Source: Octopus bimaculoides (lineage: Eukaryota). Taken from it: 56,608 nucleotides of DNA. The stretch spans positions 88,057,478 through 88,114,085 of the forward strand of contig NC_068989.1 of the NCBI RefSeq assembly GCF_001194135.2, given 5' to 3'. Of this stretch, positions 7,376-56,608 are shown in pieces. How positions within the stretch are numbered: the stretch's first letter is position 1; the number at the start of each line of letters is the position of its first letter. Made by a program: the position numbers and the translations under genes. Below the pieces are notes generated by a model. That model had not been told where the DNA came from, searched no databases, and was given only the letters and a program-made list of their open reading frames with translations.

Positions 7376-7497
7376 AAGATGCAAAAGATGCAAAAGATGC
7401 AGGCAAGGAAAAGGAGGCAGGAAAACGGTGATGATGATGAATGAAAAGGAGTAACTCAAAATTTGAGAGTTTTATGGTTTCAGTCACAAGTCCTTAC

Positions 7498-8582: not shown

Positions 8583-8741
8583 CTGGTTAGAAATAGGTTG
8601 ACCACCAGCTTCAAGAATGCTCTTCATGTTTTTCGGTCCAAAGTTGCAGACACCATAGTAATGTATCCTTCCTTTAGCAACTTGTCTCTTCAGTTCTTCC
8701 ACAGTGGCTGTGTAGTCAGAAACCATGTTTGGCCAATGGAT
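8583..8741 (-). CDS. AKR exon 4 (IHWPNMVSDYTATVEELKRQVAKGRIHYYGVCNFGPKNMKSILEAGGQPISNQ); catalytic His
   Basis: 159 nt, phase 0/0. Acceptor tctttttag|ATC, donor CAG|GTATAT. Absent from the ORF track because it has no start codon and is short. Confidence 0.93.
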
Positions 8742-8898
8742 CTAAAAAGACAACAGAGCAACAGAATAGATTTTACATTCCACTGAATTGGGGAGAAGCA
8801 ATCACAGAGATGGGCAAGATTAACAAAGCCAGTGATTTTTGGAGATGTTTTTCTTTCTATTTTTTAGCTTAGTTTTAACATTTTTCAAATAAAAGAGG

Positions 8899-10933: not shown

Positions 10934-11809
10934 NNNNNNNNNNNNNNNNNNNNNNNNNNNNNNNNNNNNNNNNNNNNNNNNNNNNNNNNNNNNNNNNNNN
11001 NNNNNNNNNNNNNNNNNNNNNNNNNNNNNNNNNNNNNNNNNNNNNNNNNNNNNNNNNNNNNNNNNNNNNNNNNNNNNNNNNNNNNNNNNNNNNNNNNNNN
11101 NNNNNNNNNNNNNNNNNNNNNNNNNNNNNNNNNNNNNNNNNNNNNNNNNNNNNNNNNNNNNNNNNNNNNNNNNNNNNNNNNNNNNNNNNNNNNNNNNNNN
11201 NNNNNNNNNNNNNNNNNNNNNNNNNNNNNNNNNNNNNNNNNNNNNNNNNNNNNNNNNNNNNNNNNNNNNNNNNNNNNNNNNNNNNNNNNNNNNNNNNNNN
11301 NNNNNNNNNNNNNNNNNNNNNNNNNNNNNNNNNNNNNNNNNNNNNNNNNNNNNNNNNNNNNNNNNNNNNNNNNNNNNNNNNNNNNNNNNNNNNNNNNNNN
11401 NNNNNNNNNNNNNNNNNNNNNNNNNNNNNNNNNNNNNNNNNNNNNNNNNNNNNNNNNNNNNNNNNNNNNNNNNNNNNNNNNNNNNNNNNNNNNNNNNNNN
11501 NNNNNNNNNNNNNNNNNNNNNNNNNNNNNNNNNNNNNNNNNNNNNNNNNNNNNNNNNNNNNNNNNNNNNNNNNNNNNNNNNNNNNNNNNNNNNNNNNNNN
11601 NNNNNNNNNNNNNNNNNNNNNNNNNNNNNNNNNNNNNNNNNNNNNNNNNNNNNNNNNNNNNNNNNNNNNNNNNNNNNNNNNNNNNNNNNNNNNNNNNNNN
11701 NNNNNNNNNNNNNNNNNNNNNNNNNNNNNNNNNNNNNNNNNNNNNNNNNNNNNNNNNNNNNNNNNNNNNNNNNNNNNNNNNNNNNNNNNNNNNNNNNNNN
11801 NNNNNNNNN
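10934..11809. other. Assembly gap (other gaps: 12618-12895, 21605-22109, 38114-38694, 42493-42650, 43863-44724, 54188-54227)
   Basis: Runs of N. All long X-containing ORFs in the track are artefacts of these gaps. Confidence 0.99.
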
Positions 11810-17584: not shown

Positions 17585-17721
17585 CAGGCATGGGCAGCCT
17601 TATCCAAGAAGCTAGCAGCACGAGACAAGGCTCATAGTCAGGCAGATAATACTAAAAACATGTAAGTTTTTCGTAGGCGTGTCTTTCAGAATGTCTCGCG
17701 GGCCTCAGTTTGCCCATGGTG
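17585..17721. mobile_element. Possible hAT-type MITE remnant
   Basis: Imperfect TIRs caggcatgggcagcct / agtttgcccatggtg. No clean TSD. Confidence 0.4.
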
Positions 17722-18010
17722 CTACGTAGTCGCTCGAGTAGCTAGAAACAGCAACGAAATTCCTTTCACTCAACTGTTTTATATTTAAAACAAAAACAGA
17801 CATATCAATTATTGCAAACTGATATGAATTATGCCTAAGAAGGTGGATGGTCTTGGCTGGAATATCTTTCGACATTGGCCAGCCTGGTGCTAAAACAGCA
17901 GCAACATGGGACAAAGAGGAGGAGAACTGAAACAGCAACAACATGGAACGAGGTGGTGCTGTAATGAAATTAAATAATAACGAACGACGACAGACAAAAA
18001 CATAGCTCAC

Positions 18011-18124
18011 CTCTTCTGTCTGTGCATCCCAAGTATTGTTGGTGATACCATTGTTAAACTGCCATGTACCGAGACACACAGGAGACACTTTCAGATCGGT
18101 GCCGAGAAGGGTTATGAGTTCCAT
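18011..18124 (-). CDS. AKR coding exon 1 (MELITLLGTDLKVSPVCLGTWQFNNGITNNTWDAQTEE)
   Basis: ATG at 18124. Typical AKR N-terminus (LG.TDLKVSPVCLGTW). Donor GAG|GTGAGC, phase 0, 114 nt. Confidence 0.9.
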
Positions 18125-19449: not shown

Positions 19450-20530
19450 TAAGGGTATTATTGCAAACAACGATCTGCATTGAACAAACCACATCTCTAA
19501 GATTGTCAAGATTGCTGAGGGTGTCTTAGCACCACTCAACCGTTCTCCAGCTATCTATTTAATGCTGTATGTGACTATGGTACGTCCACAGAGCTTGCAT
19601 CACCATTCTGGAACCCCTATCTTGCTCAGCATATCAATCTACTGGAAAACTGTTCAGGAAAATGGAACCACACGAATACAAGCCGCCAGGCATCTACCAT
19701 TCTTCGAAAGTTTTGTTTCCCTGGGCATGGGACACATTAAAGCTTCTACGTCTGGCAACTGAGTTGGCAGACACCCACAAGATTATCCACCATCTTTCCA
19801 ACAACAACCTCGGGCACCTTTTTTGAATTCCATATGTCTAACATTCTCTTTTACTCTTTTACTTGTTTCAGTCATTTGACTGCGGCCATGCTGGAGCACC
19901 GCCTTTAGTCGAGCAAATTGACCCAAGGACTTATTCTTTGTAAGCCTAGTACTTATTCTCTTGGTCTCTTTTGCCGAACCGCTAAGTTACAGGAACGTAA
20001 ACACAACAGTATCGGTTGTGAAGCAATGTTGGGGGGGGGGGGCAAACACAAACACACAAACATATATACACACACAAACATACATATATATATATATACA
20101 TATATACGACGGGCTTCTTTCAGCTTCCGTCTACAAAATCCACTCACAAGGCTTTGGTCGGCCCGAGGCTATAGTTGAAAGACGCTTGCCCAAGGTGCCA
20201 CGCAGTGGGACTGAACCCGGAACCATGTAGCTCGTAAGCAAGCTACTTACCACAGCAACAGACATGCTTACAAAATTAAAAAACAACACAGCACCCATAA
20301 CTTTCGGAAACATTTTTTCACGCTCAGAATTGCTGAAGCATGGAATAAACTACCCGCATCAGGTGTTAGCTGTCGAGACACTCCATCCTTCAAAACTTCC
20401 TTGCTTCCTGAAATTCGCCAGCAATACACCTGATGTCCCCTACCTCTCTTTCCTTTATTATTAATGTTAATTTTAGTTGTAGTACATCTGAGCACTGTAT
20501 ACGACAAATTTCATTATATGTAAAAAAAAA
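19450..20530 (+). mobile_element. CR1-clade LINE 3' portion, interrupted by a family A SINE
   Basis: Decayed LY.TMVRP.LE.ASPFWNPY...I.LLE.VQ, then after the SINE FRKHFFTLRIAEAWNKLPAS..S....SFK, followed by an A-rich tail. Confidence 0.8.
19845..20253 (-). mobile_element. CORE-like SINE family A, near full length, nested in CR1
   Basis: Reverse complement of the 46621-47019 copy. Confidence 0.9.
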
Positions 20531-24021: not shown

Positions 24022-24176
24022 ACGTGTGGTAAGTAGCATGCTTACCAATCACATGGTCCCAGGTTCAGTCCCACTGCGTGACACCTTGGCAAGTGTCTTC
24101 TACTATAGCCTCGGGCTAACCAAAGGCTTGTGAGTGGACTTGGTAGACGGAAACTGGAAGAAGTCCGTCGTATATG

Positions 24177-24213
<37 letters not shown>

Positions 24214-24632
24214 ATTTGTTTATGTGTCTGTGTTTGTCCCTCCAACATCGCTTGACAACTGATGCTGGTGTGTTTACGTGCCCGTAACTTAGCGTTTCGG
24301 CAAAAGGGACTGATAGAATAAGTACTAGGCTTACAAAGAATAAGCTCTGGGGCCGATGTGCTCGACTAAAGGCGGTGCTCCAGCATGGCCGCAATCAAAT
24401 GACTGAAACAAGTAAAAGAGTATGTATATGTATGTATTTATCTGTGTCTGTGTTTGTCCCCCCAACATCGCTTGACAACCGATGCTGGTGTGTTCACATC
24501 CCTGTAACTCAGTGCTTCAGCAAAAAAGATAAGTACTAGGCTTACAAAGAATAAGTCCTGTGGTCGATTTGTTTGATTAAAAGGCGGTGCTCCAGCATGG
24601 CCGCAGTCAAACGAGTGAAACAAGTAAAAGAA
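24022..24632 (+). mobile_element. Family A SINE with tandem duplication of its 3' half (24421-24632)
   Basis: The block tttgtcccccc aacatcgcttgacaaccgatgctgg...aaacaagtaaaag occurs twice in tandem. Confidence 0.85.
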
Positions 24633-36611: not shown

Positions 36612-36707
36612 TTAAGAAGATGTAGCCGGCGATGGCGATGGGGATAAAGATTTCCTGAGATTGTTTGGTAACTGTGAATCTATCATCTTACTCATGTGTT
36701 TGTGAAC
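36612..36707 (-). CDS. LSM12: LSM12 terminal coding exon (VHKHMSKMIDSQLPNNLRKSLSPSPSPATSS*)
   Basis: Acceptor ttctattttacag|GTT, phase 0, TAA at 36614-36612. V.KH matches the LSM12 V(E)KH start of the last exon. Total CDS 588 nt = 195 aa + stop. Confidence 0.88.
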   Translation of the reverse strand, partial: VHKHMSKMIDSQLPNNLRKSLSPSPSPATSS

Positions 36708-38695: not shown

Positions 38696-38972
<277 letters not shown>

Positions 38973-40974: not shown

Positions 40975-41084
40975 GTTTTGATAATTGCATCAAAGACTGC
41001 CTGTCCTTCGGCTGAAACGCCAACACCAACATGATTGACCCTCTCTTTCTTGTTGTCCACATTCTGTCTTATTCGGCTGGTCAG
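40975..41084 (-). CDS. LSM12: LSM12 coding exon 3 (LTSRIRQNVDNKKERVNHVGVGVSAEGQAVFDAIIK[T])
   Basis: 110 nt. Acceptor tttcatttcag|CTG, donor AC|GTTGGT (phase 2). Matches the anticodon-binding-like domain start (GVS.EGQ.LF..I.KT). Confidence 0.92.
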
Positions 41085-41615: not shown

Positions 41616-41749
41616 CTTTGCTAGGTTGAGAGGCATCAGCTGTGGAGGCTGTTCTTTAGCATCTGCTAACACAATGACATCTTTCACATAATCAAGATTG
41701 ATAAGTTTCATATCATGAAGATTGGAATTACCATTTGTGGCATTAGATT
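41616..41749 (-). CDS. LSM12: LSM12 coding exon 2 ([K]SNATNGNSNLHDMKLINLDYVKDVIVLADAKEQPPQLMPLNLAK)
   Basis: 134 nt, phase 1 in and phase 0 out. Acceptor ctctcag|AA, donor AAG|GTAAGC. Aligns without gaps to human [45 protein letters not shown] (recalled from memory). Confidence 0.93.
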
Positions 41750-41761
41750 CTGAGAGACTTT

Positions 41762-41770
41762 GTTAAGGAA
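41762..41770 (-). promoter_or_regulatory. U12-type branch point sequence TTCCTTAAC
   Basis: Exact match to the TTCCTTAAC consensus, ending 12 nt upstream of the intron 3' end. Confidence 0.9.
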
Positions 41771-43145
41771 ATCAAATAATGTTACAAAGCAACAAGTCAC
41801 AAATACATACACACATTAAAATATTATATTCCAAGAGACACCTCTTCTATATACACCTTCTATATACACCTTTGAACAAGGCTAAACAGCAACTGTAAAA
41901 TAATTTAGTTATGTAAACATAAGCACAAGCGTAGTCGTGTGGTAAGAAGCTTGCTTTCCAACCATATCGTCCTGAGTTCAGTCCCACTGCATCGCACCTT
42001 GGGCAAATGTCTTCTACTATAGCTTCAGGTCAACTAAAGTGTAACGAGTGGATTTGGTAGATGGAAAATGAAAGAAGCCCATTGTGTGTATGTGTGTCCC
42101 ACCACCACTTGACAACTGGTACTGGTGTGTTTATGTCCCCATTACTGTTGCCATGCACACCCACTACCCTTCACCACCGTAATTTCATTAACCCACTGAT
42201 ATACACACACACACTAACCCTCTTTACAAATAATTTACCAAATATAAGTATTTAAAGTACACACCCTCCCAATTTTGGAGGTCTCTAAAACAGCAGTTCT
42301 CACCTGCCACTCCCAGGACTTTGTGCAACCCTCAAGCATCCTTCTTGCAGCCCTCAACTGACTTTTATAATTTTTTCTTTAACTGACTTGTACTTTACAT
42401 TTTTGGTGTGGCCCCCTAAAAAAAAAACCAGAAGAGGTGAGAACCACTGCTCTAAAGCATAATATCCAATATACTTTGTTGTTCTGCATGACNNNNNNNN
42501 NNNNNNNNNNNNNNNNNNNNNNNNNNNNNNNNNNNNNNNNNNNNNNNNNNNNNNNNNNNNNNNNNNNNNNNNNNNNNNNNNNNNNNNNNNNNNNNNNNNN
42601 NNNNNNNNNNNNNNNNNNNNNNNNNNNNNNNNNNNNNNNNNNNNNNNNNNTAAAGATAGTGGAATGTGTCCCTAAACTCCTCTTTGGTCTTGTGCTCAAA
42701 GCATGTTGTTTGTCCCTTCTCAAGCCATGCTTGGCTCATAAGGGCCACTTTGCTGGTTTCATTGCCGTATAGCTTCCCCCACCTGGACGGGACACCCATC
42801 CATCTTAGGTGAGCTGCTAGATGCAGGAGAAGAGTGAGAGAAAGTTATGGTGAAAGAGTTAGCAGAGTTTGCCATTGCTGCGTGGAGCTTAGGTGTTTCG
42901 CTCATAAACATACACATCGCCTGGTCTGAGATTCGAACCCGTGATGCCTCAACTGCAAGTCCACTGCTCTCACCACTAGGCCATGTGCCTCCATGTTCAA
43001 AGCATTAGCTGCAATAAGGTTATTGATAGAAATGTGGACCAAAAGAATCCAAAGAACAAATGTTTAATAATACAATTAGTGCTAATGAATGGTCAGAGTC
43101 CAAAGGTACACAGACAAAATCTGTCTAGGCACAAAACATAAATAA

Positions 43146-43445
43146 CAAGAGCACTCAGAGAGCGCAAACCTCCAACAATTAGCAGGAGATGATTTTTAAA
43201 ATGAGACTATCTGAAATAAACTCTACTGCTCTCAAAAATTTAAAAATAAGAATAAAAAGGAAAAATAATCCAGAATCCTTGTCTGGTACCGGGTGAATCC
43301 CAAAACCTAATCAGTCCGTGCCAGTCACAAGGCCAAACATCTCTGAAAGTTTCATCTGAATCCTTCCAGCGGTTCTTGAGATATCTTGTCCACAGACAAA
43401 CACAGCTGAAAACAGTACCTCCACCTTCGTTAAGGCGGAGGTAAT
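43146..43445. mobile_element. Helentron-associated (HINE-like) non-autonomous element
   Basis: One end caagagcactcagagagcgcaaacctcc. The other end is the stem-loop tacctccaccttcgttaaggcggaggta (43416-43443). No TSD. Confidence 0.6.
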
Positions 43446-43469
43446 TATGAAAGTAGAAGGATCATCTAT

Positions 43470-43790
43470 TTCATTGATGAGTTTTCAGTCGTTTGATCAA
43501 CTGTGATACCCACCCAAAAGAACTAACGTGTAAATGGCTGAGTATTCCTGACACATGTACGCTTAACATAATTTAGCATACACCTACACAAGTGTGTCCC
43601 ACCCTGACTTTATTTTAATCATTGACACTCTGTTGGTCACAACAAAGAGTGTTCCAGCTGATCCGATCAACGGAACAACCAGCTCATGAAATTAATGTGC
43701 AAGTGGCTGAGCACTCCACAGACATGCATACTTTTAACAAATTTCTCAGGGAGATCCAGCGAGACACAGAATATGACAAGAATATTACAA
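43470..43790 (+). mobile_element. SINE body with duplicated aagtggctgag(c/t)actcc...acac(a)tg...cttaac unit
   Basis: Two similar units at ~43525 and ~43695. An inverted copy lies at 690-835. Confidence 0.55.
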
Positions 43791-45239
43791 CTCCCCGCTT
43801 TCGGTTATTTTTTTTTTTTGCTTAATTTTTCTACAGAAACCCACCTTTTTGAATGCGGAGATNNNNNNNNNNNNNNNNNNNNNNNNNNNNNNNNNNNNNN
43901 NNNNNNNNNNNNNNNNNNNNNNNNNNNNNNNNNNNNNNNNNNNNNNNNNNNNNNNNNNNNNNNNNNNNNNNNNNNNNNNNNNNNNNNNNNNNNNNNNNNN
44001 NNNNNNNNNNNNNNNNNNNNNNNNNNNNNNNNNNNNNNNNNNNNNNNNNNNNNNNNNNNNNNNNNNNNNNNNNNNNNNNNNNNNNNNNNNNNNNNNNNNN
44101 NNNNNNNNNNNNNNNNNNNNNNNNNNNNNNNNNNNNNNNNNNNNNNNNNNNNNNNNNNNNNNNNNNNNNNNNNNNNNNNNNNNNNNNNNNNNNNNNNNNN
44201 NNNNNNNNNNNNNNNNNNNNNNNNNNNNNNNNNNNNNNNNNNNNNNNNNNNNNNNNNNNNNNNNNNNNNNNNNNNNNNNNNNNNNNNNNNNNNNNNNNNN
44301 NNNNNNNNNNNNNNNNNNNNNNNNNNNNNNNNNNNNNNNNNNNNNNNNNNNNNNNNNNNNNNNNNNNNNNNNNNNNNNNNNNNNNNNNNNNNNNNNNNNN
44401 NNNNNNNNNNNNNNNNNNNNNNNNNNNNNNNNNNNNNNNNNNNNNNNNNNNNNNNNNNNNNNNNNNNNNNNNNNNNNNNNNNNNNNNNNNNNNNNNNNNN
44501 NNNNNNNNNNNNNNNNNNNNNNNNNNNNNNNNNNNNNNNNNNNNNNNNNNNNNNNNNNNNNNNNNNNNNNNNNNNNNNNNNNNNNNNNNNNNNNNNNNNN
44601 NNNNNNNNNNNNNNNNNNNNNNNNNNNNNNNNNNNNNNNNNNNNNNNNNNNNNNNNNNNNNNNNNNNNNNNNNNNNNNNNNNNNNNNNNNNNNNNNNNNN
44701 NNNNNNNNNNNNNNNNNNNNNNNATAAATAATCGAAAGGGAGTACGATCCATGTCCTTTACCTCCGCCAATTACTACTACATGCCTATAAGGCAGAATCG
44801 TTAGCATACCAGCAAACTGCTTAGAGGCATTTTACGTTCTGAGTTTGGTTTTGGACCTTAAGTTTCATTTCGTGGACCACGTGTTTGGTAACAAACAACA
44901 AATTAATTGATAATTAAATCAAAGTTAAAACGGATGGATTTGTTTTAGTGATTTTTTTTTAACCCGTTGCCTCAGTTAATAAGGGTTACTATTATGTATT
45001 GAAGCTAATTTCATACAACGTACACGTTAAGGAGAGCTGGAGGAGGGGCGAAGGCCTTAGATAAAACCCATAAAAACTTACGAAATGTGTTTTGGACTTG
45101 CTTAAAATCAGGTTCGGGCATGCGTTGAGGTCGGGAATGTGATAACATGCCTGGACATCATAGATCTTGGCAAATAAGCGCGTGAACATGTATGCGTGTC
45201 GGTTGGTATGTGCGTATTTCTCAAGTGTTTTAATACGTA

Positions 45240-45530
45240 ACTTTATCTTTTTATTGTTTCCGGACTCTGCACTGCGGTCATGCTGCAGCACCGCCTTGAA
45301 GGGTTTTAGTCGAAAAAAATCGACCTTAGTGCTTACTTGTAGAATCTGGTATTCTATCGATCTCTTGTCAAACCGCTAAGTTACATGGGACGTAAAGAAA
45401 CTACCACTGGTTGTCACAGCTTTCCACACAGTGTTCGTCTACCAAATCCACTCACAAGGAACTGGTCGGCCTGGGGCTATATTAGAAGACACTCACCCAA
45501 GGTGCAGCGCAGTGGGACTGAACTTGCGGT
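45240..45530 (-). mobile_element. Family A SINE (diverged) in the LSM12 minor intron
   Basis: Reverse complement of the head, core and tail of family A. Confidence 0.75.
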
Positions 45531-45636
45531 TACAGAATGAGATGATGACATGATACAACCACATCTGCGCCTTAATGCATTGGAAAGTATTAAAAAAAAT
45601 CTTATTTTTAATCGATATTTAAAAGAAAATGTATTC

Positions 45637-45682
<46 letters not shown>

Positions 45683-46003
45683 GTTGCTATTATGCAAAAG
45701 TGTCGCATGTCCAAAACGTTGCTTTTTCAGAAAACGAAACAATAGTTTCACCATTCCATTCGTTTTTACATTAGCAACAGTTTTAGCTCAACAATAATGA
45801 TACTTCGTTGGGTGCATAAAATCGTAACTCCATGCATGTAGGATATTTTCAGTCAGAAATATTTTCGCGAAACTGTCGTATGTGGGACTTGCTACACTTT
45901 TGAAAAATGCTAAACTTTTGGACTACACTTTAACAATTTTTATCTAAAGCAGCTGGAGATACGATAGTTTGACCAAATGAACCGGCTATTGCAAACAAAA
46001 TTA

Positions 46004-46147
46004 GGTAAATTTTCAGATTAACACCCGCACAATCTTCACTGGGATGTTAGCGTTACGGTTAGGGACGGAATTCCTTAACCTTAAAATCCTAACCCTGACC
46101 CTAACTCCCTAGTGAAAATCGTGCCGGTGTTAATCTGAAAATTTACC
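46004..46147. mobile_element. Second copy of the GGTAA...TTACC TTAGGG-core MITE, perfect 8 bp TSD CAAAATTA
   Basis: TSD at 45996-46003 and 46148-46155. TIRs homologous to 19234-19442, with a shorter telomere-like core. Confidence 0.88.
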
Positions 46148-46620
46148 CAAAATTAAATATTGAATAAAAAAAAAAAACGCATTTGGCCAAATTTGGACAT
46201 ACAACAGTTTAACATAATAGCAACGATATACACACACAACCGACATAGATATAGGTTTCATATAAATGTCGTTATTTTACACTCATGAATTAACTCCGAA
46301 ATGGACGACAGACGGTACAACACTAAAGCAGATGATGACATAACACAACGTTTAAAGTGCTTATTCTGGTGTAAACAAACGAAAAAGCAACACGTCCTTC
46401 GCAGAAAGCCCTCACCACCACTACCATCACTATTAAACTGTTGGCCGCAAGATTTGTAGAGCAGCGATGCCCAACCTTTTTGCACCACGAAAAGGGGTCT
46501 CAACGCGCATAACAAAACATGAAGTGAATAATATATGATTTAACTACAATATTATATATACAATGTAAAAAAAAACACCCAGTCTACCGTGATAGTGAAA
46601 ATAGAATTAAAATTTCTTTT

Positions 46621-47019
46621 AGGCGCAGGATGACTATGTGGTAAGTAGCTTGCTTACCAACCACATAGTTCCGGGTTCAGTCCCACTGCATGGCACCTTG
46701 GGCAAGTGTCTTCTACTATAGCCTCGGGCCGACCAAAGAGTTGTGAGTGGATTTGGTAGACGGAAACTGAAAGAAGCCTGTCGTATGTATATATATATAT
46801 GTATGTATGTTTGTGTGTCTGTTTGTCACCCCAACATCGCTTGACAACCGATGCTGGTGTGTTTACGTCCCCGTAACATAGCGGTTCAGCAAAAAGAGAC
46901 CGATAGAATAAGTACTAGGCTTCCAAAGAATAAGTCCTGGGGTCGATATGCTCGACTAAAGGCGATGCTCCAGCATGACCGCAGTCAAATGACTGAAACA
47001 AGTAAAAAAAGTAAAAGAG
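46621..47019 (+). mobile_element. Family A CORE-like SINE, full length
   Basis: A-box-like and B-box-like head (ggttcagtccc). Core gcaccttgggcaagtgtcttctactatagcctcggg resembles the CORE domain. Central (TA)/(TG) microsatellite; gtaaaa-repeat tail. Confidence 0.9.
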
Positions 47020-48221
47020 CGTGAGTGTTTGGGGCAGCCTGTTGTCGAGGGTCGTAGAAAAAAACTTTGCGATGTTGACTTACGTCCCTTGAAATTTGGC
47101 GTCGATTTGAAACTGGTGTCAGCTTTCGTCTGATCGATAAAATAGATATCAGTGATTATAAGGAATTGCCCCACCACCATCGTCAAGTTTGGGGGTTCTC
47201 TGTGCTAAGGTTAAAATATTGTAGGTTCTGTTGATTCATGTCACACAGAACCTCGTTCGGCCTGCTAGAAATAACAGCCAAATTTATCATATCACGATAC
47301 CATAGCACCTTGAAAAATAAATAACTAAAAATGTAAAAACATTGGGTACAGTATTTCTGGATATACTGTGCTTGAATAAAAGATGAGAGAGTCATGGTTG
47401 GCCTGAATCTAAACAGAAATCCTAGTTTTCGCTAACAAAAAAGTTATGGGTTGTGTAGCAGTTTGTGCTCTCTCTAGAGCCCCAACATCTGTTCAAACCC
47501 TTTATTGAAGTTACACAGTGTTCCTTCAACTAATATCACAGTCATCTAGTATCAGCTTTATCCAATCGCAATGCCAAGCTCGCACATTTAACTGTGCACC
47601 CTATTAATAACTACAAGCCCACAGATCCATCAGGCTTGGTTACACGAGACAAGACTGGAGTATTTGAAATTCATACGGCAATCATCATTGTTTTAACGTC
47701 CATTTTTCCATGCTTGCATGGGTCATACAGACTTTATTGAGGCAGATTTTCTACAATTCGAAGCCCCTCCTGTCACCAACCCTCACCGGTTTCCAAGCAA
47801 GGTAATGTTTCCCCGTGACCAAATAGGACTTCACAGAACATTACAAATGATACAATGTCAAGACAACGAAACAACACACATACAAGGGCTTCTTACAGTT
47901 TCCATCTTCCAAATCCACTCACAAGTCTATAGAAAGTGCTACAGTTTCCATCTATCAAACCTGCTCACAAAGATTTGGTCAGACGGAGGCTACTGCAGAA
48001 GATACTTGTCCAAGGTGCTATGTAGCAGGACTGAACCAATGCTGTATCAGTCTACTTTTTCTCAGGCATTAGACTTCTGGTTATCAAACTCATTAAATGT
48101 TTGCATTGAAAGAAATAAGAATGAAAAAAAAATCTCATCTATTTTTCTCTTTCGTAAACCAAGTTTGGATGGGTGTCTATACACCACCAAAGTTATAGAA
48201 TGCCTGGCTGAATGTGTATAA

Positions 48222-48400
48222 GCTAACGTTACGTTCTGAGTTCAAATTCCGCCGAGGTCGACTTTGCCTTTCATCTTTTTGAGGTCGATAAATTAAGTAC
48301 CAGTTACACACTGGTGTCGATGTAATCAACTTAATCCCTTTGTCTGTCCTTGTTTGTCCCCTCTATGTTTAGCCCCTTGTGGGCAATAAAGAAATAAGAA
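48222..48400 (+). mobile_element. Family B SINE, 3' two-thirds with intact tail
   Basis: gttctgagttcaaattccgccgaggtcgactttgcc...gggcaataaagaaataag. Confidence 0.85.
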
Positions 48401-48846
48401 TTTTGTTCCTCTTTACGTTCTCAGTTGATACTCCAGCAAGGTTGACTGCCATTCAGGGTTGATAAAATAAGTATCAGTTGAGAGCTGGTGGGGAGGGGGG
48501 GTCAACGTAACAAACTTACTCCCTCCCCTGAAATTGCTGGCCTTGTGCCAAAATTCGAAGCCAACACCAAGCTGGTGTTTGGAACATAAATTAACAGGAA
48601 ATTTTGAAGGTTTAAATTTTGGTATCAATTTAAACAGGAATTTGTATCATAGAATTAGGGACAATCTCAAGCAGGGTGCTCATTAAATGAGTGAAGTCAC
48701 ATTACAGATCAAGTATGTGGACCTTGCAAAGCAATGTCACACCCCGTCACCCAAAAATGTTTAGTCCTGGTCAGTCTTCATCAAGCAGACCAAACAGATC
48801 AAGAGTTCCAATTGAGACTGTTTTCCATTTTATTCCAAAACAGTGT

Positions 48847-49180
48847 GAAGGCACATGGCTCGATGGTTAGAGTGTTGGGCTCACAATCATGAGGTAGTGA
48901 GTTCGATTCCCAGACCAGGCTACATATTGTGTTCTTGAGCAAGGCATTTTATTTCACATTGCTCCAGTTCACTCAGCTATAGAAATGAGTTACGTCACTG
49001 GTGCCAAGCTGTATCAGCCCCTTTGCCTTTCCCAACATCGGTGGCACGGAGAGGGGAGGCTGATATGCATGGGCGACTGCTGGTCTTCCATACACGACCT
49101 TGCCCAGACTTGTGCCTCAGAAGGGTACTTTCTAGGTGCAATCCCATGGTCATTCATGACCGAAGGGGATCCTCTCCAAA
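48847..49180 (+). mobile_element. tRNA-derived SINE family F, near full length
   Basis: gaaggcacatggctcgatggttagagtg...gagttcgattccc...catgaccgaagggg. Confidence 0.7.
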
Positions 49181-50311
49181 CAGTATAACTTGGATTGTAT
49201 TATTTAATGTGCTCTTCCTTTATGACAGTAGGGAGTGATTTGATACAGCTTTAGCTGCTATTGTTAGTAGGTCAAGCAACAATGTCTTTGCATTACAAGG
49301 TGAAGTGCAATGAAATGGTTTGAACTGGGAACTGAACCAGTGTCTCTTCACTCATTAAAATAGGACACCACATAAAAACACCCTTGCTGGTACCATGTGT
49401 AAAGCACTGGTACTGGTACCACATAAAAAGCACCCAGGAAACTCTGTAAAGGGGTTGGCATTAGGAAGGACATAGAAACAATTCCAAAACAGACAACAGA
49501 GCCTGGCACAGGTCCCAGGCTTATCAGCTCCTGTGAAATCCTCCAATTCATGCCAGCATGGAAAATGGATGTTAAATAATGAAAGATGTTGAAGTAGTGA
49601 AATAATAGAGCATCAGAAAAAAAAGGGGTATAAGTCCCCTTAACATCCAGTGTTCAAATCTCCTAAAGATCAATAAACAAAGGATCAATTAAGTATCAGA
49701 AGTTGATTTCATCAACTACACCCCTTACTTGTAAAGGTGTGGCCCTGCAGCAACAATGTCAGAAAATTAATCTAGAGAAGGCACAGACATGGCTGAGTGG
49801 TCGAGAAATTTGATTCCCAATTACATGGGCTCCGGTTCAGTCCCACTGTGTGGTACTTTGGGCAAGCATTTTATACTCTAGTCAAGGCCAGCTAAAACTG
49901 AGTGGAATTCATCATTATCATTTAACATCCATTGTCTATGCTAGCATGGGTTGGACAATTTGACCAGGACTGGGAAGCTGAGGGGTTGCGCCAGACACCA
50001 GTCTGATTTGCCAGCATGGAAAGCCAACATTAAACAATGATGATGATGATAATAGTTTAACACTATGGAAATGCATATCCACATGTGCACCAAGCTTGAA
50101 AGATTGCTTGGAGACACAAGGTATGTTATGCAAGTCTGCTGGATTATTGCGTTTCCATAGCATGAAATTATTAGCAGCTCTCATTTAAATACTGTCTCTA
50201 CTATATGGCATTTCTCTCTCACTAGACGGACTACTTTTTTTTGTTGATCCTGCCTATAACAAAACAGTAAACTCTCCCTCTCTCTTTATAAATAATATAT
50301 ATATATATATA

Positions 50312-50424
50312 TAGGTGTGGCTGTGTGGTAAAAAGTTTGTCCCCCAAAAACAAGGTTCCAGGTTCAGCCCCACTGTGTGGCACCTTGGGCAAATGCCTTC
50401 TACTATAGCCCATTGTGTGTGTGC

Positions 50425-50475
<51 letters not shown>

Positions 50476-50640
50476 TGTGTGTGTGTCTTGCCTACATCGC
50501 TTGACAACTGATGTTGGTGTGTTTACATCCCCATAACTTAGTTCGGCAAAAGGGACCGATAGAATAAGTACTGGGGTTAATTTCTTCAACTAAAGGCGGT
50601 GCTCTAGCATGGCCGCAGTCAAATGACTGAAACAAGTAAA
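50312..50640 (+). mobile_element. Family A SINE with expanded central (TG)n(TA)n
   Basis: Same architecture as 46621-47019. Confidence 0.8.
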
Positions 50641-52235
50641 AATATATATATATATACACACACATGGACAGGAATGGCTGTGTAGTAAGAAGTTTGCCTC
50701 CCAACCACATGGTTTTGGGTTCAGTCCTGCTGTACGACACCTCAGTCAAGTGTGTTCAACTATAACCCTGGGCCGACCAAACTAGCAGAAGGAAATTGAA
50801 AAGAAGACCATCCTATATACAGATAAGTGAATGTGTGTGCTACTCTACTTGCCTTGACATCATGTGATGGTCATAAATGAGTGACATCATCAGGCAAAAC
50901 AGCGTTCTTTGTCTCCAATCTTCTGTGAAAGTATATTCAGGTATAAAGGAGAGAAAATTTTACTTGGAAACAGGTGAGAGTTGATGACAGGAAAGGCATC
51001 CAGCCATAAAAATAAATCCACAACAAATTTTGTCCAACCCATACAAGCAAGGAAAAGCAGACATTAAAAAATGGTGATACACACACAAACATGCATTTTT
51101 TTAGGGACTCTAATATAGGGATAAGGCCACAACATTTGAGGGCTGGGTAATGTCAAACTCCAACATTGGTCCTATATTTTAGCAACCCCCAGAAAGACAA
51201 AAAAAGTTAGCCATAATAGAATATGAACTTAGAGTGCAAAGGTCCATAATTACATACCACAATGCAGTTCGTCTAACAGCTCAGCGAGTTTGACTAATTA
51301 ATAGCTGCTGAATTTTGTTGAGGCAGATTTTCTACAGCCGAATGCTCTACCAGTCACTAACCCTCACTTGTTTTGAAGCACAGTAATATTTCCCCTATGG
51401 TCAGACATGTTTTTTAGGGAAAACTAGAAACAAACAATGCTGCTTGTAATGATGGAGATGTGCTTTTACAATCATGATGATGTCAAGACAAGGGTACACA
51501 CAAGCACACACCATCACTTAATGTCTGTTTGTCCATGCTTGCACAGGTTGAACAGCTTGAATGGGACTGGTAAGGGCCAGGGGCCAAACCAGGTTCCATA
51601 GTCTGATTTGTCTTGGTTTCTACAGCTGGATGCCCTTCCTAACACCAACCACTTTACAAAGTGTACTGGGGGATTTTTACCTGGCATCATCACCAGTGGT
51701 TTTTACCCAGCACAGGCTTCTTTTCAGTTTCCATCTATCAAATCCACTCCCAAGGCTTTGATTGGCTCAGGACTATAGAAGACACTTGCCCAAAGTGCTG
51801 CACAGTGGGACTGAACCCTAACCCAAATGGTTAGGAAGCAAGCTTTATAACCACAGAACTACTCATCATGATTGTTTAACATCTAGTATCGGTTGTATGG
51901 TTCGACATGGAGCAGGCCAAACTCGACATGGTTTCTATAGCTGGATGCCTTTCCTAATGCCAACCACTTTGCCAAGAGCCTTTTACATGCCACCAGCACA
52001 GGTGTGCTTACACAGCACCGACACAGGTGCTTTTTACGTGGCATCAGCACCTGAAAGGACAAGCCTGTATATCTGGAAGACAGCAATTTTATTTTCCTAT
52101 GCTTATATCAGATGTTATACCATGTGACTCCTACTGTCACTAAATAATCCCTTCACATTTTCTTTTTTAAAGCAGCATGCAGTAAAAGAGGAGACATAGT
52201 GTGATATCCATGCTTTTTTTTTTAATAAGAAAATG

Positions 52236-52626
52236 TAATGGCTGTGTGATAAGTAGCTTGCTTACCAACCACATGGTTCTGGGTTCAGTCCCACTGCGTG
52301 ACACCTGGGGCAAGTGTCTTCTACTATAGCCTCGGGTCGACCAAAGCCTTGTGAGTGGATTTGGTAGACGGAAACTGAAAGAAGCCCGTCGTATATATGT
52401 ATATATATATATGTATGTGTGTGTATATGTTTGTGTGTCTGTGTTTGTCCCTCAACCGATGCTGGTGTGTTTATGTCCCTGTAACTTAGCGGTTTGGCAA
52501 AAGAAACCGATAGAATAAGTACTAGGCTTCCAAAGAATAAGTCCTGGGGTCGATTTGCTCGACTAAAGGCGGTGCTCCAGCATGGCCGCAGTCAAATGAC
52601 TGAAACAAGTAAAAGAGTAAAGAGTA
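52236..52626 (+). mobile_element. Family A SINE, full length, young
   Basis: High similarity to 46621-47019 and 24022-24420. Confidence 0.9.
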
Positions 52627-53493
52627 TACCGGTAGGTTTTCAACCAAAAACTGAACCTACACAAAAGCCTCTGCCAGGTTGTTCCACATGCTAGAAATAG
52701 CAACCGAATCTCAATTCACGTTTTTTGTTGCTAAACAAGTAGGGACCAAGAGTATGAAACTATCATCACCATAAACAGACCTTTGAAAGTCCCCAGGAGG
52801 TGAGGGGTTGTCAGAATTAAATGATAATCTGTTATCAATCATAACCAGTTCAAAGGAATGCCAAGAAGATAGTGAGATGGTGCAAACAAAAATGTAGACC
52901 AGCACTGGAATAAATGCAACCCAGGACTTGGTCCTGTAACTCCCTCCACTCCCACACACTAAGTTCCGAGTTCATATCCCGTCGGGGTTAGCTATTTTTT
53001 TAAATAAATGAGGGAATATCTATATGGTCGCTAGACTTCCTAGAAACAGCAGTCAAAGTCTCAAATTACATATTAGAATTTTTTTTTTTAGACACATTGC
53101 TTAATATAGTCCCCAGTATAACAGTATACAAATAGAAGAGATGGTCACTGTTGGATCGCCTTCACCTGTAGGTTTGCTTAGCTAGGGCTGACCTGTGACT
53201 TAAGAAAGTATTGTATATGCTTCCAAAGCAGAACCAGTAAATATTTACAGAGAATATATCATATCCCAATCTTTTGCCAGGGTTTGTAATTGATTTTATT
53301 CCCGATTCATGCTTTTTTATTAACTGTAGTAGACCCCTGAAGAGACGAAAAGGCCAAATCGATTCTAGCAAGATTTGAAAACGGCAATAATTTTCGCTAA
53401 CTAACGATACTTCTTTCAGATTGTAATTTTATGAGAAAGCCTAAAAAAAAAATTATAAGAAAAAAACAATTTCGAACTACATTTAAACGGGTG

Positions 53494-53539
<46 letters not shown>

Positions 53540-54149
53540 CATATACACACACAAAAGCGAAGAAATACACTCCGACTTAAGTAAAGGAAGCCAAACGTGG
53601 TCGCCAAACCCGTTAGAATAAGCCCAACCTTATTCCAACCAAAGCGTAGTCATTCAAAGAGCACGTTATATAAAATAGTCCTAGATACACACACACCATT
53701 TCAACTAAAGAAAACAATGGGATGGTCACTACTGGAAGGCCTTTGATCGCTGATCAGCTCAGAGCTCAGGTGGGGATCAAGTAACCAAAATATACATCTC
53801 ATAAACAAAAAAGAATGTTACAAAACACTATTATAAAAAGAATATATATCTATATATAAATAATATAGGTCCAACTTTGGTGTACATTTATTCCAGTTGT
53901 ACCCTTCTAACCATTTTTTAAAATCATTTTATTTTTTCACCCATAATCTATTCTGTGACTACATTTGCTAAGCGTATTAAATGTTACGAAGACGGTAAGG
54001 GTGTGATTTAGGGAACGTATATATGTTGTCATGCAGGAAAGACTGACAGAGGTTTTCATTTTCATCTGTGGAATGCGTAATCAGTCATACTGTCGCTACT
54101 CCGAGTTTTGCGTTGCCCTTATTTCGTTCTATAAACACACCCACACACA

Positions 54150-54187
<38 letters not shown>

Positions 54188-54399
54188 NNNNNNNNNNNNN
54201 NNNNNNNNNNNNNNNNNNNNNNNNNNNTATATATATAAATATATATATATGAGTGTATTTTGATAAGCTTAAGAGTTTGGGGAGTAGCAACAATTACTGA
54301 TGAGACAAGGATGAAGAAGAAGAGGTGTTCAGTGTTTGTGTAGTAGTAGTAGTAGTAGTAGTAATACTAGTACAAGAAATTATGTGTATAGTGGTCATC

Positions 54400-55000
54400 A
54401 GAAACAAGCAGTTAAATCTTAATCGACCCGGTAAAAACAGCAGCCAAACCTCCCTCAGTCTGTCTTAGAAACGGAAGGACACACTGTACAGTAGAGTCAT
54501 CGATCTTCGAATTCCACTCACATGTCGGATGCGTTATAGGAATATAAATTGACCTAAGAATATTTTGGTATATATGTGAATAAGAAGATGTTTATTGATG
54601 GAAAGTCTTTGATCGTCGGTACACCCGAAAGGGGCTGACCTGGAACTAATGAATTTCATCTCAACCTGCTAGATTAGATATAGCAGTCAAATCTTCCTCA
54701 TATATCATACTCAACCATTTTAAGGATATACACGAGATAATGGTGTAGTCCTAGATATGCTATTAATAAAACACAGGGTGATCGTAATCATTATGTCTTT
54801 GATAAGGTCTGTCCACACAATCAAAGCTAACCAAATGCTAAACAAGAATTAATAATACTTAACGTGGTAGAAATAGCAGGATAATATACCTCAATTCACA
54901 TCCTACCATTTTTAAGTATCCGAGTACATGGAGTGCTAGATACAGCCATTCATGAACAAAATACACAGGATGGTCACAGCTGACCTGAGGTTAAATAACA
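54400..55000. repeat. Cluster of ~3 degenerate copies of a dispersed repeat (tagaaatagcagccaaatc... family), also at ~5010, 17180, 18780, 47260, 53030
   Basis: Recurring atagcag(c/t)caaa..ct(c/t)cctca and tagtcctagata motifs. Confidence 0.5.
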
Positions 55001-55163
55001 ATAAAAATCTACAAGTATAATTACAACATTAAGTGTTGTTGCCGGCAGAAACTCTTGTCCGTGTCTCTGTCTCTCTCTCTCCGGCACACGGTCCTCTCAC
55101 TACAAAGATATTTACTGCAAAGAACAAAATATACAAACATACAGGAGGTAAAAGCGAAGGTAA

Positions 55164-55172
55164 AAAGGATAC
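55164..55172 (-). promoter_or_regulatory. U12-type 5' splice site GTATCCTTT
   Basis: Exact match to the RTATCCTTT minor-intron donor consensus at the exon boundary predicted by homology. Confidence 0.92.
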
Positions 55173-55290
55173 TAATTATTAGCAATTTGGTACCTATGTC
55201 GAAAGCAGCGACCTCTCCTTCCAGTTTCTCGTTATAAACGGTGGTGCAAGAAATCCGGCTTCCAACAATGAAACATTCACTGTCCGCCAT
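55173..55290 (-). CDS. LSM12: LSM12 coding exon 1 (MADSECFIVGSRISCTTVYNEKLEGEVAAFDIGTKLLII + 1 nt)
   Basis: ATG at 55290. The peptide resembles the N-terminal Sm-like fold of LSM12 (F.VG..VSC.T...EGEV.AFD..TK.L.L). 118 nt, ends in phase 1 at A|GTATCCTTT. An in-frame ATG also exists 6 codons upstream (55308). Confidence 0.93.
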
Positions 55291-56608
55291 ATTTTGATAC
55301 AGCTTCATTTTCACCTTAGTGAAGACGGTTTCAGGCAGTGAATAAAAAAAAAAATACATATCAAATTCAAAAGTTTATTGCAGGCTCAAAAAATTTCATA
55401 ACTATTACAGTAGCAAAAATTTTCGAAATTGTTTCCAGCATCTATAAGCATTTAAGAAAAATAAAATAAATTTCTACCAAATAATAATTTAGATTATTTG
55501 CATGCAGAAGAAAAAGGGGAGAAAATGAAGTACAGCATTGTTAAAATACGGAAGATTAAAAGGGTAATAATTTGTATGCCGTGAAGTAAATGACGAAATT
55601 ACATTTCTATCATTTTTAACGATTTATGTGAAAATTTAATAAAGAATTTTAAGCATAGCATTTATCCTCTGAAATAAATCTGGATAGTAATAAAGTATAA
55701 ATTAAAAGAAAAAGGTAATTACAAGATGTATGTTATGTCATTCCGTAATTTGCTTCTGTAGGCGTTAAGCTTTGATGCACCATACCTTAATTTTTCAAGA
55801 GGTGGGGAACCGATAGAGTAATGTTTTATAATATAATCATTTTATTATCCAGAAAAGCATTAACTTTATGCAATATTTAAGAAGTAATTTTTTTAATTTC
55901 CCAAGGAAATTGTGATTTATATTTAATGAATCGGGAAATGATTCGAAGCTAGAAAACTCAGAATGGAGCTCATCACGTAAAACGTGGTTACAGAGCACCA
56001 TGTGGACACGAATAACAAACATGGACTTTGCTTTGCCACTTGTGATTAGAAACCAAGTTGAGGGTGAGTAGTCGCTCCATACATCCGTTATGTATGTACC
56101 TGATTGCTTGCGTGTCGTGATCAAGTTACCCTTAATTGCGATTCAATTCTAAAGGTATTTAATTTAACTTTATATATTAATGTTTACCTTTCAATCACAG
56201 TAAATATATATGTATATATATATAGTATATACACATATAATTAAATATACATACCCACATTTTGTATTACAGGTTGTTGAGTGAAGATGTATTTAAAAAA
56301 AACGAATTCAGTGTTGGGAATGAAGAACTAAAAATTAAAGCCTAATTAATTGATAATTACAAATATATTTTCTTTCTAACCATTATATATTTATCGAAAG
56401 TTCATTCTTCCAACTAATCTTTTACCATTTCTACTCACTAAATACTAATTATCTCCTTTAGCTGTTACCATGTTAAAAGTTGCTTGCTTTTTTTTTTTAA
56501 TGAACTTTACCCTCTACATTATTTTGTGCTATCGTTATTAAAAATATGTATATATTTCTCTACTTTCTTTAACAATAACTTTCTCTTCTTTTTTTTTTTT
56601 TTTTTTTT

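What the first reader, a model, noticed from the sequence alone, without database searches (positions are those of the whole stretch)
41750..55172. A ~13.4 kb U12-type (minor spliceosome) intron in cephalopod LSM12
Seen: exon 1 ends at A|GTATCCTTTTTAC, and exon 2 is preceded by TTCCTTAAC exactly 12 nt before the AG, with only a weak pyrimidine tract. The join is in frame (A|AA = Lys), and the 134 nt exon 2 matches vertebrate exon size as I recall it. Established: these are the U11 and U12 snRNA recognition motifs of GT-AG subtype minor introns, which are rare. From memory, LSM12 carries a minor intron at this position in vertebrates and Drosophila (CG15735). Inference: an ancient bilaterian minor intron has been retained in a mollusc while swelling with many transposon fragments. 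That makes LSM12 output (an Ataxin-2 adaptor and reported NAADP-binding protein) potentially rate-limited by the minor spliceosome. Gene finders and the ORF track miss the link because exon 1 reads through as a 112 aa hydrophobic ORF.
Basis: partly seen in the sequence, partly recalled or inferred. Interest (0 to 1): 0.82.

Follow-up and report, generated by a model that had tools for sequence, protein, structure and literature searches.

The report
Conserved minor-spliceosome intron in octopus LSM12
The first coding intron of the Octopus bimaculoides LSM12 gene carries the signals of the rare minor (U12-type) spliceosome, but it is the octopus copy of a minor intron already known in human and fly LSM12, and the gene is already annotated with this junction, so the find is correct but ordinary.

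Summary
On the minus strand, LSM12 coding exon 1 ends at 55173 and is followed by GTATCCTTT. TTCCTTAAC (41770-41762) lies 12 nt before exon 2 (41749-41616, 134 nt). The join is in phase 1 (A|AA, Lys).

The window is identical to the O. bimaculoides assembly GCA_001194135.2. All three assembly gaps lie inside the intron, and their flanks are collinear with the gap-free O. sinensis intron (18,054 nt).

The same intron position carries U12-type signals in nine species examined here: two octopuses, a cuttlefish, three bivalves, a chiton, a gastropod and a macaque. Cuttlefish RNA-seq contigs show this intron removed at exactly these sites.

Published work already lists LSM12 intron 1 as U12-type in human and Drosophila. 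RefSeq (XP_014771223.1) and UniProt (A0A0L8HM05) already join these exons, so the claim that gene finders miss the link is wrong.

About 30% of the readable intron is interspersed repeat, mainly a roughly 385-bp SINE-like element.

Rate limitation by minor splicing is plausible by analogy with fly but was not tested here.

Verdict: a real minor intron, a new member of a known kind, of low interest. One side observation is a cuttlefish transcript that joins the upstream U2-type donor directly to this acceptor, skipping exon 1.

The parts
56255..56260 (-). Coding end of a short upstream exon ('exon 0', ATGTGG) used by the RefSeq model. Its donor is TGG|GTATGT, which is U2-type.
   Evidence: Base 3001 of the RefSeq-derived locus L008 corresponds to window 56260. 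The homologous exon 0 in cuttlefish ends AAG|GTAAGC.
55173..55314 (-). LSM12 coding exon 1, the N-terminal half of the LSM domain. In-frame ATGs lie at 55308 (MKLYQN...) and 55290 (MADSE...).
   Evidence: Pfam LSM12_LSM.
55164..55172 (-). U12-type 5' splice site GTATCCTTT, the site expected to pair with U11 and then U6atac.
   Evidence: It matches only 3 of 9 positions of the U2 consensus MAG|GTRAGT. GTATCCTT is kept in 8 of the 9 species examined.
41750..55172 (-). The intron: 13,423 nt as assembled, including 1,059 N, in phase 1.
   Evidence: It is collinear with the 18,054-nt O. sinensis intron. It holds no Rfam match, no tRNA, and no Pfam-matching ORF.
54188..54227 (.). Assembly gap (40 N) inside a (TA)n microsatellite, within the intron.
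   Evidence: It is spanned by a single alignment to O. sinensis.
43863..44723 (.). Assembly gap (861 N), within the intron.
   Evidence: Its flanks map to L001 positions 16998 and 17809, 811 nt apart and collinear.
42493..42650 (.). Assembly gap (158 N), within the intron.
   Evidence: Its flanks map to L001 positions 21389 and 21434, which are collinear.
52214..52628 (+). Full-length copy of a roughly 385-bp SINE-like interspersed repeat. Further copies in the intron lie at 46626-47019, 50313-50656, 41931-42139, 51712-51862 and 45241-45526.
   Evidence: There are about 30 copies or fragments in the window, on both strands.
41762..41770 (-). U12-type branch-point sequence TTCCTTAAC. The candidate branch adenosines are at 41764 and 41763, 13-14 nt from the intron end.
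   Evidence: It is conserved at 7-8 of 8 positions, with spacing of 10-18 nt, in the 9 species.
41750..41751 (-). 3' splice site AG. AAAGTCTCTC is all that lies between the branch site and the AG, so there is no long pyrimidine tract.
41616..41749 (-). LSM12 exon 2 (134 nt). Its donor is AAG|GTAAGC, which is U2-type.
40975..41084 (-). LSM12 exon 3.
38751..38880 (-). LSM12 exon 4.
36612..36707 (-). LSM12 last coding exon, up to the TAA stop.
   Evidence: The full product is identical to P0003 and P0006.

Best explanation
Window 55172-41750 (minus strand) is the GT-AG U12-type (minor-spliceosome) intron of Octopus bimaculoides LSM12.

How it works (inferred from the established minor-splicing pathway). 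The U11/U12 di-snRNP recognises the 5' splice site GTATCCTTT and the branch site TTCCTTAAC together. U6atac then replaces U11 at the 5' splice site. Branching occurs at an adenosine 13-14 nt from the AG, and exon 1 is joined to exon 2 inside a lysine codon within the LSM domain.

Origin. It is the orthologue of the LSM12 intron 1 already classified as U12-type in human, mouse, zebrafish and Drosophila, so it is inherited from the bilaterian ancestor rather than newly gained. Its large size (13.4 kb here, 18.1 kb in O. sinensis, 9.3 kb in cuttlefish, against 1.7-5 kb in most other molluscs and macaque) reflects the repeat-rich cephalopod genome.

What is shown and what is inferred.
- Shown: the signals, their exact placement, their conservation, and splicing at exactly these sites in cuttlefish RNA.
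- Inferred: that the minor spliceosome performs the reaction in octopus, and that its efficiency affects LSM12 output.
For: - Exact signals. The 5' splice site matches RTATCCTTT at 9 of 9 positions and the branch site matches TCCTTAAC at 8 of 8, ending 12 nt before exon 2.
- Poor U2 fit. The donor matches the U2 consensus at 3 of 9 positions. It lacks G at -1 and G at +5. The other introns of the gene score 6-8 of 9 and have clear pyrimidine tracts.
- Gene identity. The spliced product is LSM12 (Pfam LSM12_LSM and AD) and is identical to XP_014771223.1 and A0A0L8HM05.
- Conservation. The same codon position and phase carry U12-type signals in O. sinensis, Acanthosepion pharaonis, Pecten, Mya, Mactra, Liolophura, Batillaria and Macaca. 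Between octopus and cuttlefish only the first ~11 intron bases, the 9-nt branch site and its 12-nt spacing are conserved; the flanking intron sequence diverges.
- Transcripts. Cuttlefish RNA-seq contigs L002 and L003 read ATTATTA|AATCAAATTC, which is exact removal of L016:2053-11378.
- Literature. LSM12/CG15735 intron 1 is U12-type in fly and human (PMC2831892). LSM12 is listed among human genes with U12 introns (PMC1874599). Its orthologous intron cluster is shown as minor in human, mouse and zebrafish and minor-like in fly (bioRxiv 10.1101/2022.10.12.511939). Molluscs are relatively rich in minor introns, and most mollusc orthologues of human minor introns are classed as minor (PMC10639083; PMC11347168).
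- Phase. Phase 1 fits the known bias of minor introns away from phase 0.
Against: - There is no RNA evidence from O. bimaculoides itself. The junction rests on protein homology, the RefSeq model and cuttlefish cDNA.
- No formal PWM or intronIC score could be computed, because no matrices were available.
- Octopus minor snRNAs were not examined here. The window has no Rfam match.
- One cuttlefish contig (L012) joins a U2-type donor to the same acceptor. This AG can therefore apparently also be used in a reaction that starts from a major-type 5' splice site.
- 1,059 nt of the intron are unread.
Confidence: 0.93

Rival explanations
1. It is an ordinary U2-type intron whose ends resemble U12 signals by chance.
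For: Each 9-mer taken alone is expected about 0.5-0.6 times in a window of this size. The intron has GT-AG termini. TTAAC also fits the loose U2 branch consensus YTNAY.
Against: The joint placement at the homology-defined boundaries has a probability of about 4e-8. The donor matches the U2 consensus at only 3 of 9 positions. The same motifs sit at the same codon in nine species spanning molluscs and a primate. The orthologous intron is published as U12-type.
Confidence: 0.02
2. The interval is not one intron. An unread gap or a mis-join hides another exon or a break in continuity.
For: There are three gaps (1,059 N) inside the interval. The chromosome-level v2 assembly keeps the same gaps.
Against: The flanks of all three gaps are collinear with the gap-free O. 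sinensis intron, at matching distances. tblastn finds no further LSM12 coding pieces there. The protein alignment runs through the junction without a missing segment. Cuttlefish cDNA joins the two exons directly. No gene other than LSM12 is called inside the interval in O. sinensis or O. bimaculoides.
Confidence: 0.02
3. The acceptor is shared. Besides minor splicing of exon 1 to exon 2, the upstream U2-type donor of exon 0 is spliced directly to the same AG in a substantial fraction of octopus transcripts. This skips exon 1 and gives an mRNA that lacks half of the LSM domain, so that competition between the two routes, not minor-splicing speed alone, sets LSM12 output.
For: Cuttlefish contig L012 reads ...AAAATAAG|AATCAAATTC. 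That is exon 0 (genomic donor AAG|GTAAGC) joined to the first base of exon 2. Octopus has the homologous exon 0 with a U2-type donor.
Against: This rests on one contig from one run, whereas proteins that carry the normal junction sit on 7 and 14 contigs (P0002, P0008). No octopus transcript was available. The branch-site-to-AG spacing and the thin pyrimidine tract in octopus are poor for U2 use.
Confidence: 0.12

Closest known systems
Vertebrate LSM12 intron 1 (human, mouse, zebrafish; macaque examined here), a GT-AG U12-type intron
   Same: It has the same codon position and phase (A|AA Lys after L-x-[IL]) and the same 134-nt exon 2. The 5' splice site is GTATCCTT and the branch site is TTCCTTAAC (L015). 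It is published as U12-type.
   Different: The macaque intron is 2,956 nt, against 13,423 nt here. Its branch site lies 18 nt from the intron end and is followed by a long T-rich tract. In octopus the distance is 13 nt and there is almost no pyrimidine tract.
Drosophila Lsm12a / CG15735 intron 1
   Same: It is the orthologous first intron, GT-AG, and is listed as U12-type. It is retained, and Lsm12a protein falls, when minor splicing is impaired (PMC12084885).
   Different: The fly branch site is degenerate, so one classification calls it 'minor-like'. The octopus intron keeps perfect consensus at both sites. The fly locus was not read here.
LSM12 intron 1 of other molluscs (Pecten, Mya, Mactra, Liolophura, Batillaria) and of the cuttlefish Acanthosepion pharaonis
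   Same: The position, the phase and U12-type signals are the same. The cuttlefish has an identical branch-site 9-mer and spacing, and its cDNA proves splicing at these sites.
   Different: Several have a one-base deviation: Mya GTATCT and TTCTTAAC, Pecten TCCTTTAC, chiton TCCTCAAC, Batillaria GCCTTAAC. Most are much shorter (1.7-5.1 kb); Mya is 13.7 kb.

Membership tests
U12-type (minor spliceosomal) intron, GT-AG subtype | The 5' splice site matches /RTATCCTTT directly at the exon boundary. | tested here: met
   A|GTATCCTTT at 55172-55164, 9 of 9 positions.
U12-type (minor spliceosomal) intron, GT-AG subtype | The branch-point sequence matches TTCCTTRAY (core TCCTTAAC). | tested here: met
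   TTCCTTAAC at 41770-41762, 8 of 8 core positions.
U12-type (minor spliceosomal) intron, GT-AG subtype | The distance from the branch site to the 3' splice site is short and constrained (roughly 10-20 nt). | tested here: met
   The second A of the motif lies 13 nt from the last intron base. The distance is 10-18 nt in the eight orthologues checked for it.
U12-type (minor spliceosomal) intron, GT-AG subtype | There is no strong polypyrimidine tract, and the donor fits the U2-type consensus poorly. | tested here: met
   Only AAAGTCTCTC lies between the branch site and the AG. The donor matches MAG|GTRAGT at 3 of 9 positions, against 6-8 of 9 for the gene's other introns.
U12-type (minor spliceosomal) intron, GT-AG subtype | A quantitative classifier score (intronIC, U12DB or MIDB PWMs) falls in the minor range. 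| not testable with these tools
   No matrices or classifier were available. Only consensus matching and chance estimates were done.
U12-type (minor spliceosomal) intron, GT-AG subtype | The orthologous intron is of minor type in other lineages. | tested here: met
   Nine species were read here. It is published for human and fly and for mouse and zebrafish.
U12-type (minor spliceosomal) intron, GT-AG subtype | Transcripts are spliced at exactly these sites. | tested here: inconclusive
   This is met for the cuttlefish orthologue, by comparing cDNA L002/L003 with genome L016. For O. bimaculoides there is only the RefSeq model and protein homology. No transcript contig was found, and the read-through ORF is not on record.
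U12-type (minor spliceosomal) intron, GT-AG subtype | The host has the minor spliceosome (U11, U12, U4atac and U6atac snRNAs and its specific proteins). | not tested
   The window holds no snRNA gene and the genome could not be searched. In the literature, O. sinensis is used as a species with minor introns and molluscs are described as minor-intron rich (PMC10639083).
U12-type (minor spliceosomal) intron, GT-AG subtype | Removal depends on the minor spliceosome, shown by knock-down or mutation of U12, U6atac or another minor-spliceosome component. | not testable with these tools
   This needs an experiment. It has been shown only for fly lsm12a, in miso mutants.
LSM12 protein family | An N-terminal LSM12-type LSM domain plus a C-terminal AD (anticodon-binding) domain. 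| tested here: met
   PF21166 at 3.4e-26 and PF09793 at 1.6e-26, both above their cut-offs.

The most novel reading that the evidence does not exclude
In cephalopods the acceptor of this minor intron is shared with the major-type donor of the upstream 5' exon. Exon 1 skipping, as seen once in cuttlefish RNA, would then be a regulated switch. When minor splicing of the very long intron is slow or down-regulated, transcripts are diverted to an mRNA that cannot encode an intact LSM domain. This would couple LSM12 (Ataxin-2 partner) dosage to minor-spliceosome activity through competition between the two spliceosomes at a single AG.
Probability: 0.1. Interest if true: 0.45.

Novelty: new member of a known kind. 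Interest (0 to 1): 0.2.

Why it matters
The result adds little that is new. LSM12 intron 1 is a textbook conserved minor intron, and surveys already report that molluscs keep most ancestral minor introns.

It has three modest uses:
- It documents directly, across four mollusc classes (Cephalopoda, Bivalvia, Gastropoda, Polyplacophora) and a primate, that this one intron has kept minor-type signals since the bilaterian ancestor.
- It shows that a minor intron tolerates growth to 9-18 kb through SINE insertions while only about 11 nt at the 5' end, the 9-nt branch site and its spacing stay fixed.
- It offers a convenient reporter intron for anyone testing minor-spliceosome function in cephalopods.

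Any link to LSM12 dosage, and so to Ataxin-2 or NAADP biology, remains speculation.

Tried and rejected
- Rfam (gathering thresholds) and ARAGORN on the whole window found nothing. The window therefore holds no snRNA or tRNA gene, and the SINE-like repeat is not recognised as a tRNA.
- ORFs inside the intron. Only gap-spanning artefacts and one 167-aa ORF without any Pfam match were found, so there is no sign of a nested gene or an intact transposase.
- Intron-retention evidence. I looked up the 112-aa exon 1 read-through ORF in the assembly collection, and it is not on record.
- Supplementary tables of the MIDB paper and the pan-eukaryotic survey were checked for an explicit octopus LSM12 entry, but no usable text is held. 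I cannot say whether this exact intron is already in MIDB, IAOD or intronIC data.
- Other U12-like strings in the window are chance matches. GTATCCTT at 8663 (+) lies inside a minus-strand aldo/keto-reductase exon. ATATCCTTT at 35411 (+) lies in a repeat. TTCCTTAAC at 46071 (+) is antisense inside the intron.
- The word-indexed protein search found few relatives: 2 hits, then 31 with a profile. The exhaustive representative search was needed to reach the chiton, gastropod and primate orthologues.
- No PWM scoring was attempted, because I had no published matrices and would not invent frequencies.

Full report
**What is in the sequence**

The gene lies on the minus strand. Exon 1 reads ...GGTACCAAATTGCTAATAATTA and is followed by GTATCCTTTTTACC. 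The last exon base is 55173 and the first intron base is 55172.

At the other end...TTATTTGATTTCCTTAACAAAGTCTCTCAG precedes AATCTAATGCC. The last intron base is 41750 and exon 2 starts at 41749. Exon 2 runs to 41616, is 134 nt long, and ends at AAG|GTAAGC.

The join gives ATT A|AA TCT (Ile-Lys-Ser), phase 1. The spliced translation aligns along its whole length with LSM12. Pfam finds the LSM12_LSM and AD domains above their cut-offs.

The only imprecision is that TTCCTTAAC ends 12 nt before the exon, not 12 nt before the AG. The 112-aa read-through ORF of exon 1 also exists.

**Is it more than chance?**

As bare strings the two 9-mers are unremarkable. GTATCCTTT occurs once against 0.61 expected, and TTCCTTAAC occurs twice against 0.53 expected.

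What is improbable is the placement. The exon boundaries are fixed independently by protein homology. Finding ATCCTT directly after that GT, together with TCCTTAAC at one of about seven allowed offsets before that AG, has a composition-based probability of about 4e-8. It is the only TCCTTAAC-N6-14-AG in the window on either strand.

The donor matches the U2 consensus MAG|GTRAGT at only 3 of 9 positions, with no G at -1 or at +5. The gene's other introns score 6-8 of 9 and have obvious pyrimidine tracts. The other U12-like strings in the window lie inside a coding exon of another gene, inside a repeat, or on the antisense strand.

**Origin of the window, and the gaps**

The spliced protein is identical to O. 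bimaculoides XP_014771223.1 and UniProt A0A0L8HM05. The window is base-for-base identical, gaps included, to GCA_001194135.2 chromosome CM046609.1.

All three flagged gaps lie inside the intron, so reading frame is not at issue. Continuity was tested against the gap-free O. sinensis locus (L001), where the orthologous intron is 18,054 nt with identical splice signals.
- The 40-N gap sits in a (TA)n run within one 4-kb alignment.
- The flanks of the 158-N gap map 45 nt apart.
- The flanks of the 861-N gap map 811 nt apart.
- Everything is collinear.

The size difference between the two octopuses comes from a few kilobase-scale insertions or deletions. No further LSM12 coding pieces and no other called genes lie in the interval.

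**Comparative evidence**

Using the exhaustive protein search and the genome look-ups, I read the orthologous junction in seven more species. The table lists the intron length, the 5' splice site and the branch site, with its distance from the second A of the motif to the intron end where this was measured.

| Species | Intron length (nt) | 5' splice site | Branch site (distance to intron end) |
|---|---|---|---|
| Cuttlefish Acanthosepion pharaonis | 9,326 | GTATCCTTTTTT | TTCCTTAAC (motif ends 12 nt before exon 2) |
| Pecten maximus | 3,788 | GTATCCTTT | TCCTTTAC (10 nt) |
| Mya arenaria | 13,718 | GTATCTTTT | TTCTTAAC (10 nt) |
| Mactra antiquata | 5,112 | GTATCCTTG | TCCTTAAC (12 nt) |
| Chiton Liolophura sinensis | 2,164 | GTATCCTTT | TCCTCAAC (10 nt) |
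| Gastropod Batillaria attramentaria | 1,727 | GTATCCTTG | GCCTTAAC (11 nt) |
| Macaca mulatta | 2,956 | GTATCCTTC | TCCTTAAC (18 nt) |

In every case the intron interrupts the same lysine codon after its first base. Between octopus and cuttlefish the intron sequence diverges. Only about the first 11 bases, the 9-nt branch site and its exact 12-nt spacing are kept. That is the footprint expected of functional U11/U6atac and U12 recognition sites.

**Transcript evidence**

Logan RNA-seq contigs from cuttlefish (L002-L007) carry an uninterrupted LSM12 CDS. Aligned to the cuttlefish genome, they show ATTATTA|AATCAAATTC, which is removal of exactly the GTATCC...CCAG interval.

No transcript contig from an Octopus species was found, so for O. 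bimaculoides the junction rests on the RefSeq model and on homology.

**Literature**

- Lin et al. 2010 list CG15735/LSM12 intron 1 of 4 as GT-AG and U12-type in both fly and human (PMC2831892).
- LSM12 is in an early list of human genes with U12 introns (PMC1874599).
- Olthof and colleagues show the LSM12 orthologous intron cluster as minor in human, mouse and zebrafish and 'minor-like' in fly, because of a degenerate branch site (bioRxiv 10.1101/2022.10.12.511939).
- Larue and Roy use O. sinensis among species with conserved minor introns and note that molluscs are relatively rich in them (PMC10639083).
- The MIDB paper states that most mollusc orthologues of human minor introns are themselves minor (PMC11347168).

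Retention of this intron in an octopus is therefore what the field would predict.

**Mechanism**

The mechanism is inferred from the established minor-splicing pathway, not tested here. The U11/U12 di-snRNP binds the 5' splice site and the branch site cooperatively. The U4atac/U6atac.U5 tri-snRNP joins, and U6atac replaces U11 at the 5' splice site. The short distance from branch site to AG substitutes for a pyrimidine tract.

The intron lies inside the LSM domain, so an unspliced or mis-spliced transcript cannot give functional protein. The read-through ORF stops after 112 codons.

**The side claims**

- Swelling by transposons is supported. About 30% of the 12,364 readable intron bases have other copies within this window alone, which is a lower bound. 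Most of it is a roughly 385-bp SINE-like element with about 30 copies or fragments in the window. There are also several microsatellites.
- 'Gene finders miss the link' is refuted by the RefSeq and UniProt entries.
- 'Rate-limited by the minor spliceosome' is only an analogy. In fly ovaries lacking Miso, the lsm12a minor intron is retained and Lsm12a protein falls (PMC12084885). In the U6atac mutant microarray study, CG15735 was among the genes with non-significant change (PMC2952598).

**An unexpected detail**

One cuttlefish contig (L012, one run) reads ...GTAATCAAAATAAG|AATCAAATTC. That joins the upstream 5' exon, whose genomic donor is the U2-type AAG|GTAAGC, directly to the first base of exon 2, skipping exon 1. 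The longest ORF then starts at a Met inside exon 2 and lacks half of the LSM domain (P0009).

Octopus has the homologous upstream exon with a U2-type donor, TGG|GTATGT. This could be a low-level by-product of the kind reported around minor introns, or a real alternative route. With one contig, it cannot be decided.

**Verdict**

The feature is a new member of a well-known kind: the conserved LSM12 minor intron in another, already annotated species. Interest is low.

Noticed in passing
L012:1-60, compared with L002:1630-1870 and L016:1150-1230 and 11310-11400: One cuttlefish RNA-seq contig joins the 5' exon (genomic donor AAG|GTAAGC, U2-type) directly to the first base of exon 2. It skips coding exon 1 and uses the same AG as the U12-type intron. 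The resulting ORF (P0009, 145 aa) starts inside exon 2.
   Followed up: partly
window 55314-55288 and 56260-56255 (minus strand): The start codon is ambiguous. An in-frame upstream ATG (55308, MKLYQN...) is conserved at protein level in octopus, argonaut and cuttlefish models. The RefSeq model adds 'MW' from a separate upstream exon (ATGTGG|GTATGT).
   Followed up: partly
window 52214-52628 (+), with about 30 further copies or fragments across the window, e.g. 19850-20254, 24024-24422, 46630-47015, 7005-7379: A roughly 385-bp interspersed SINE-like element occurs in both orientations at 68-91% identity. It has an internal GGGTTCAGTCCCA box reminiscent of a tRNA B box, and a TG/TA microsatellite in its middle. 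ARAGORN and Rfam do not recognise it.
   Followed up: partly
window 5809-6348 (minus strand): A 179-aa ORF matches Pfam Transposase_1 (a mariner-type partial DDE domain, E 7e-23). It is probably a transposon remnant.
   Followed up: partly
window about 8585-8742 (minus strand); possibly also 17705-18124: This is an exon of an aldo/keto-reductase family gene on the minus strand (Pfam PF00248, E 1.7e-7 for the 53-aa exon translation), downstream of LSM12. The GTATCCTT at 8663 (+) lies inside it and is a chance match.
   Followed up: partly
L001:1175-2245, L016:1-291, L002:366-1406: An intronless RRM_1-domain gene lies head-to-head just upstream of LSM12 in O. sinensis and in the cuttlefish. In cuttlefish RNA-seq assemblies the two genes are even merged on one contig, which suggests overlapping divergent transcripts or a shared promoter. 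In O. bimaculoides this gene would lie just beyond the window end.
   Followed up: no
L013:3000-4400 (chiton Liolophura, LSM12 intron 2 region): There are many weak tblastn matches of LSM12 residues ~78-95 (a proline-rich stretch) to a repetitive tract. It is probably low-complexity tandem repeat rather than exon copies.
   Followed up: no
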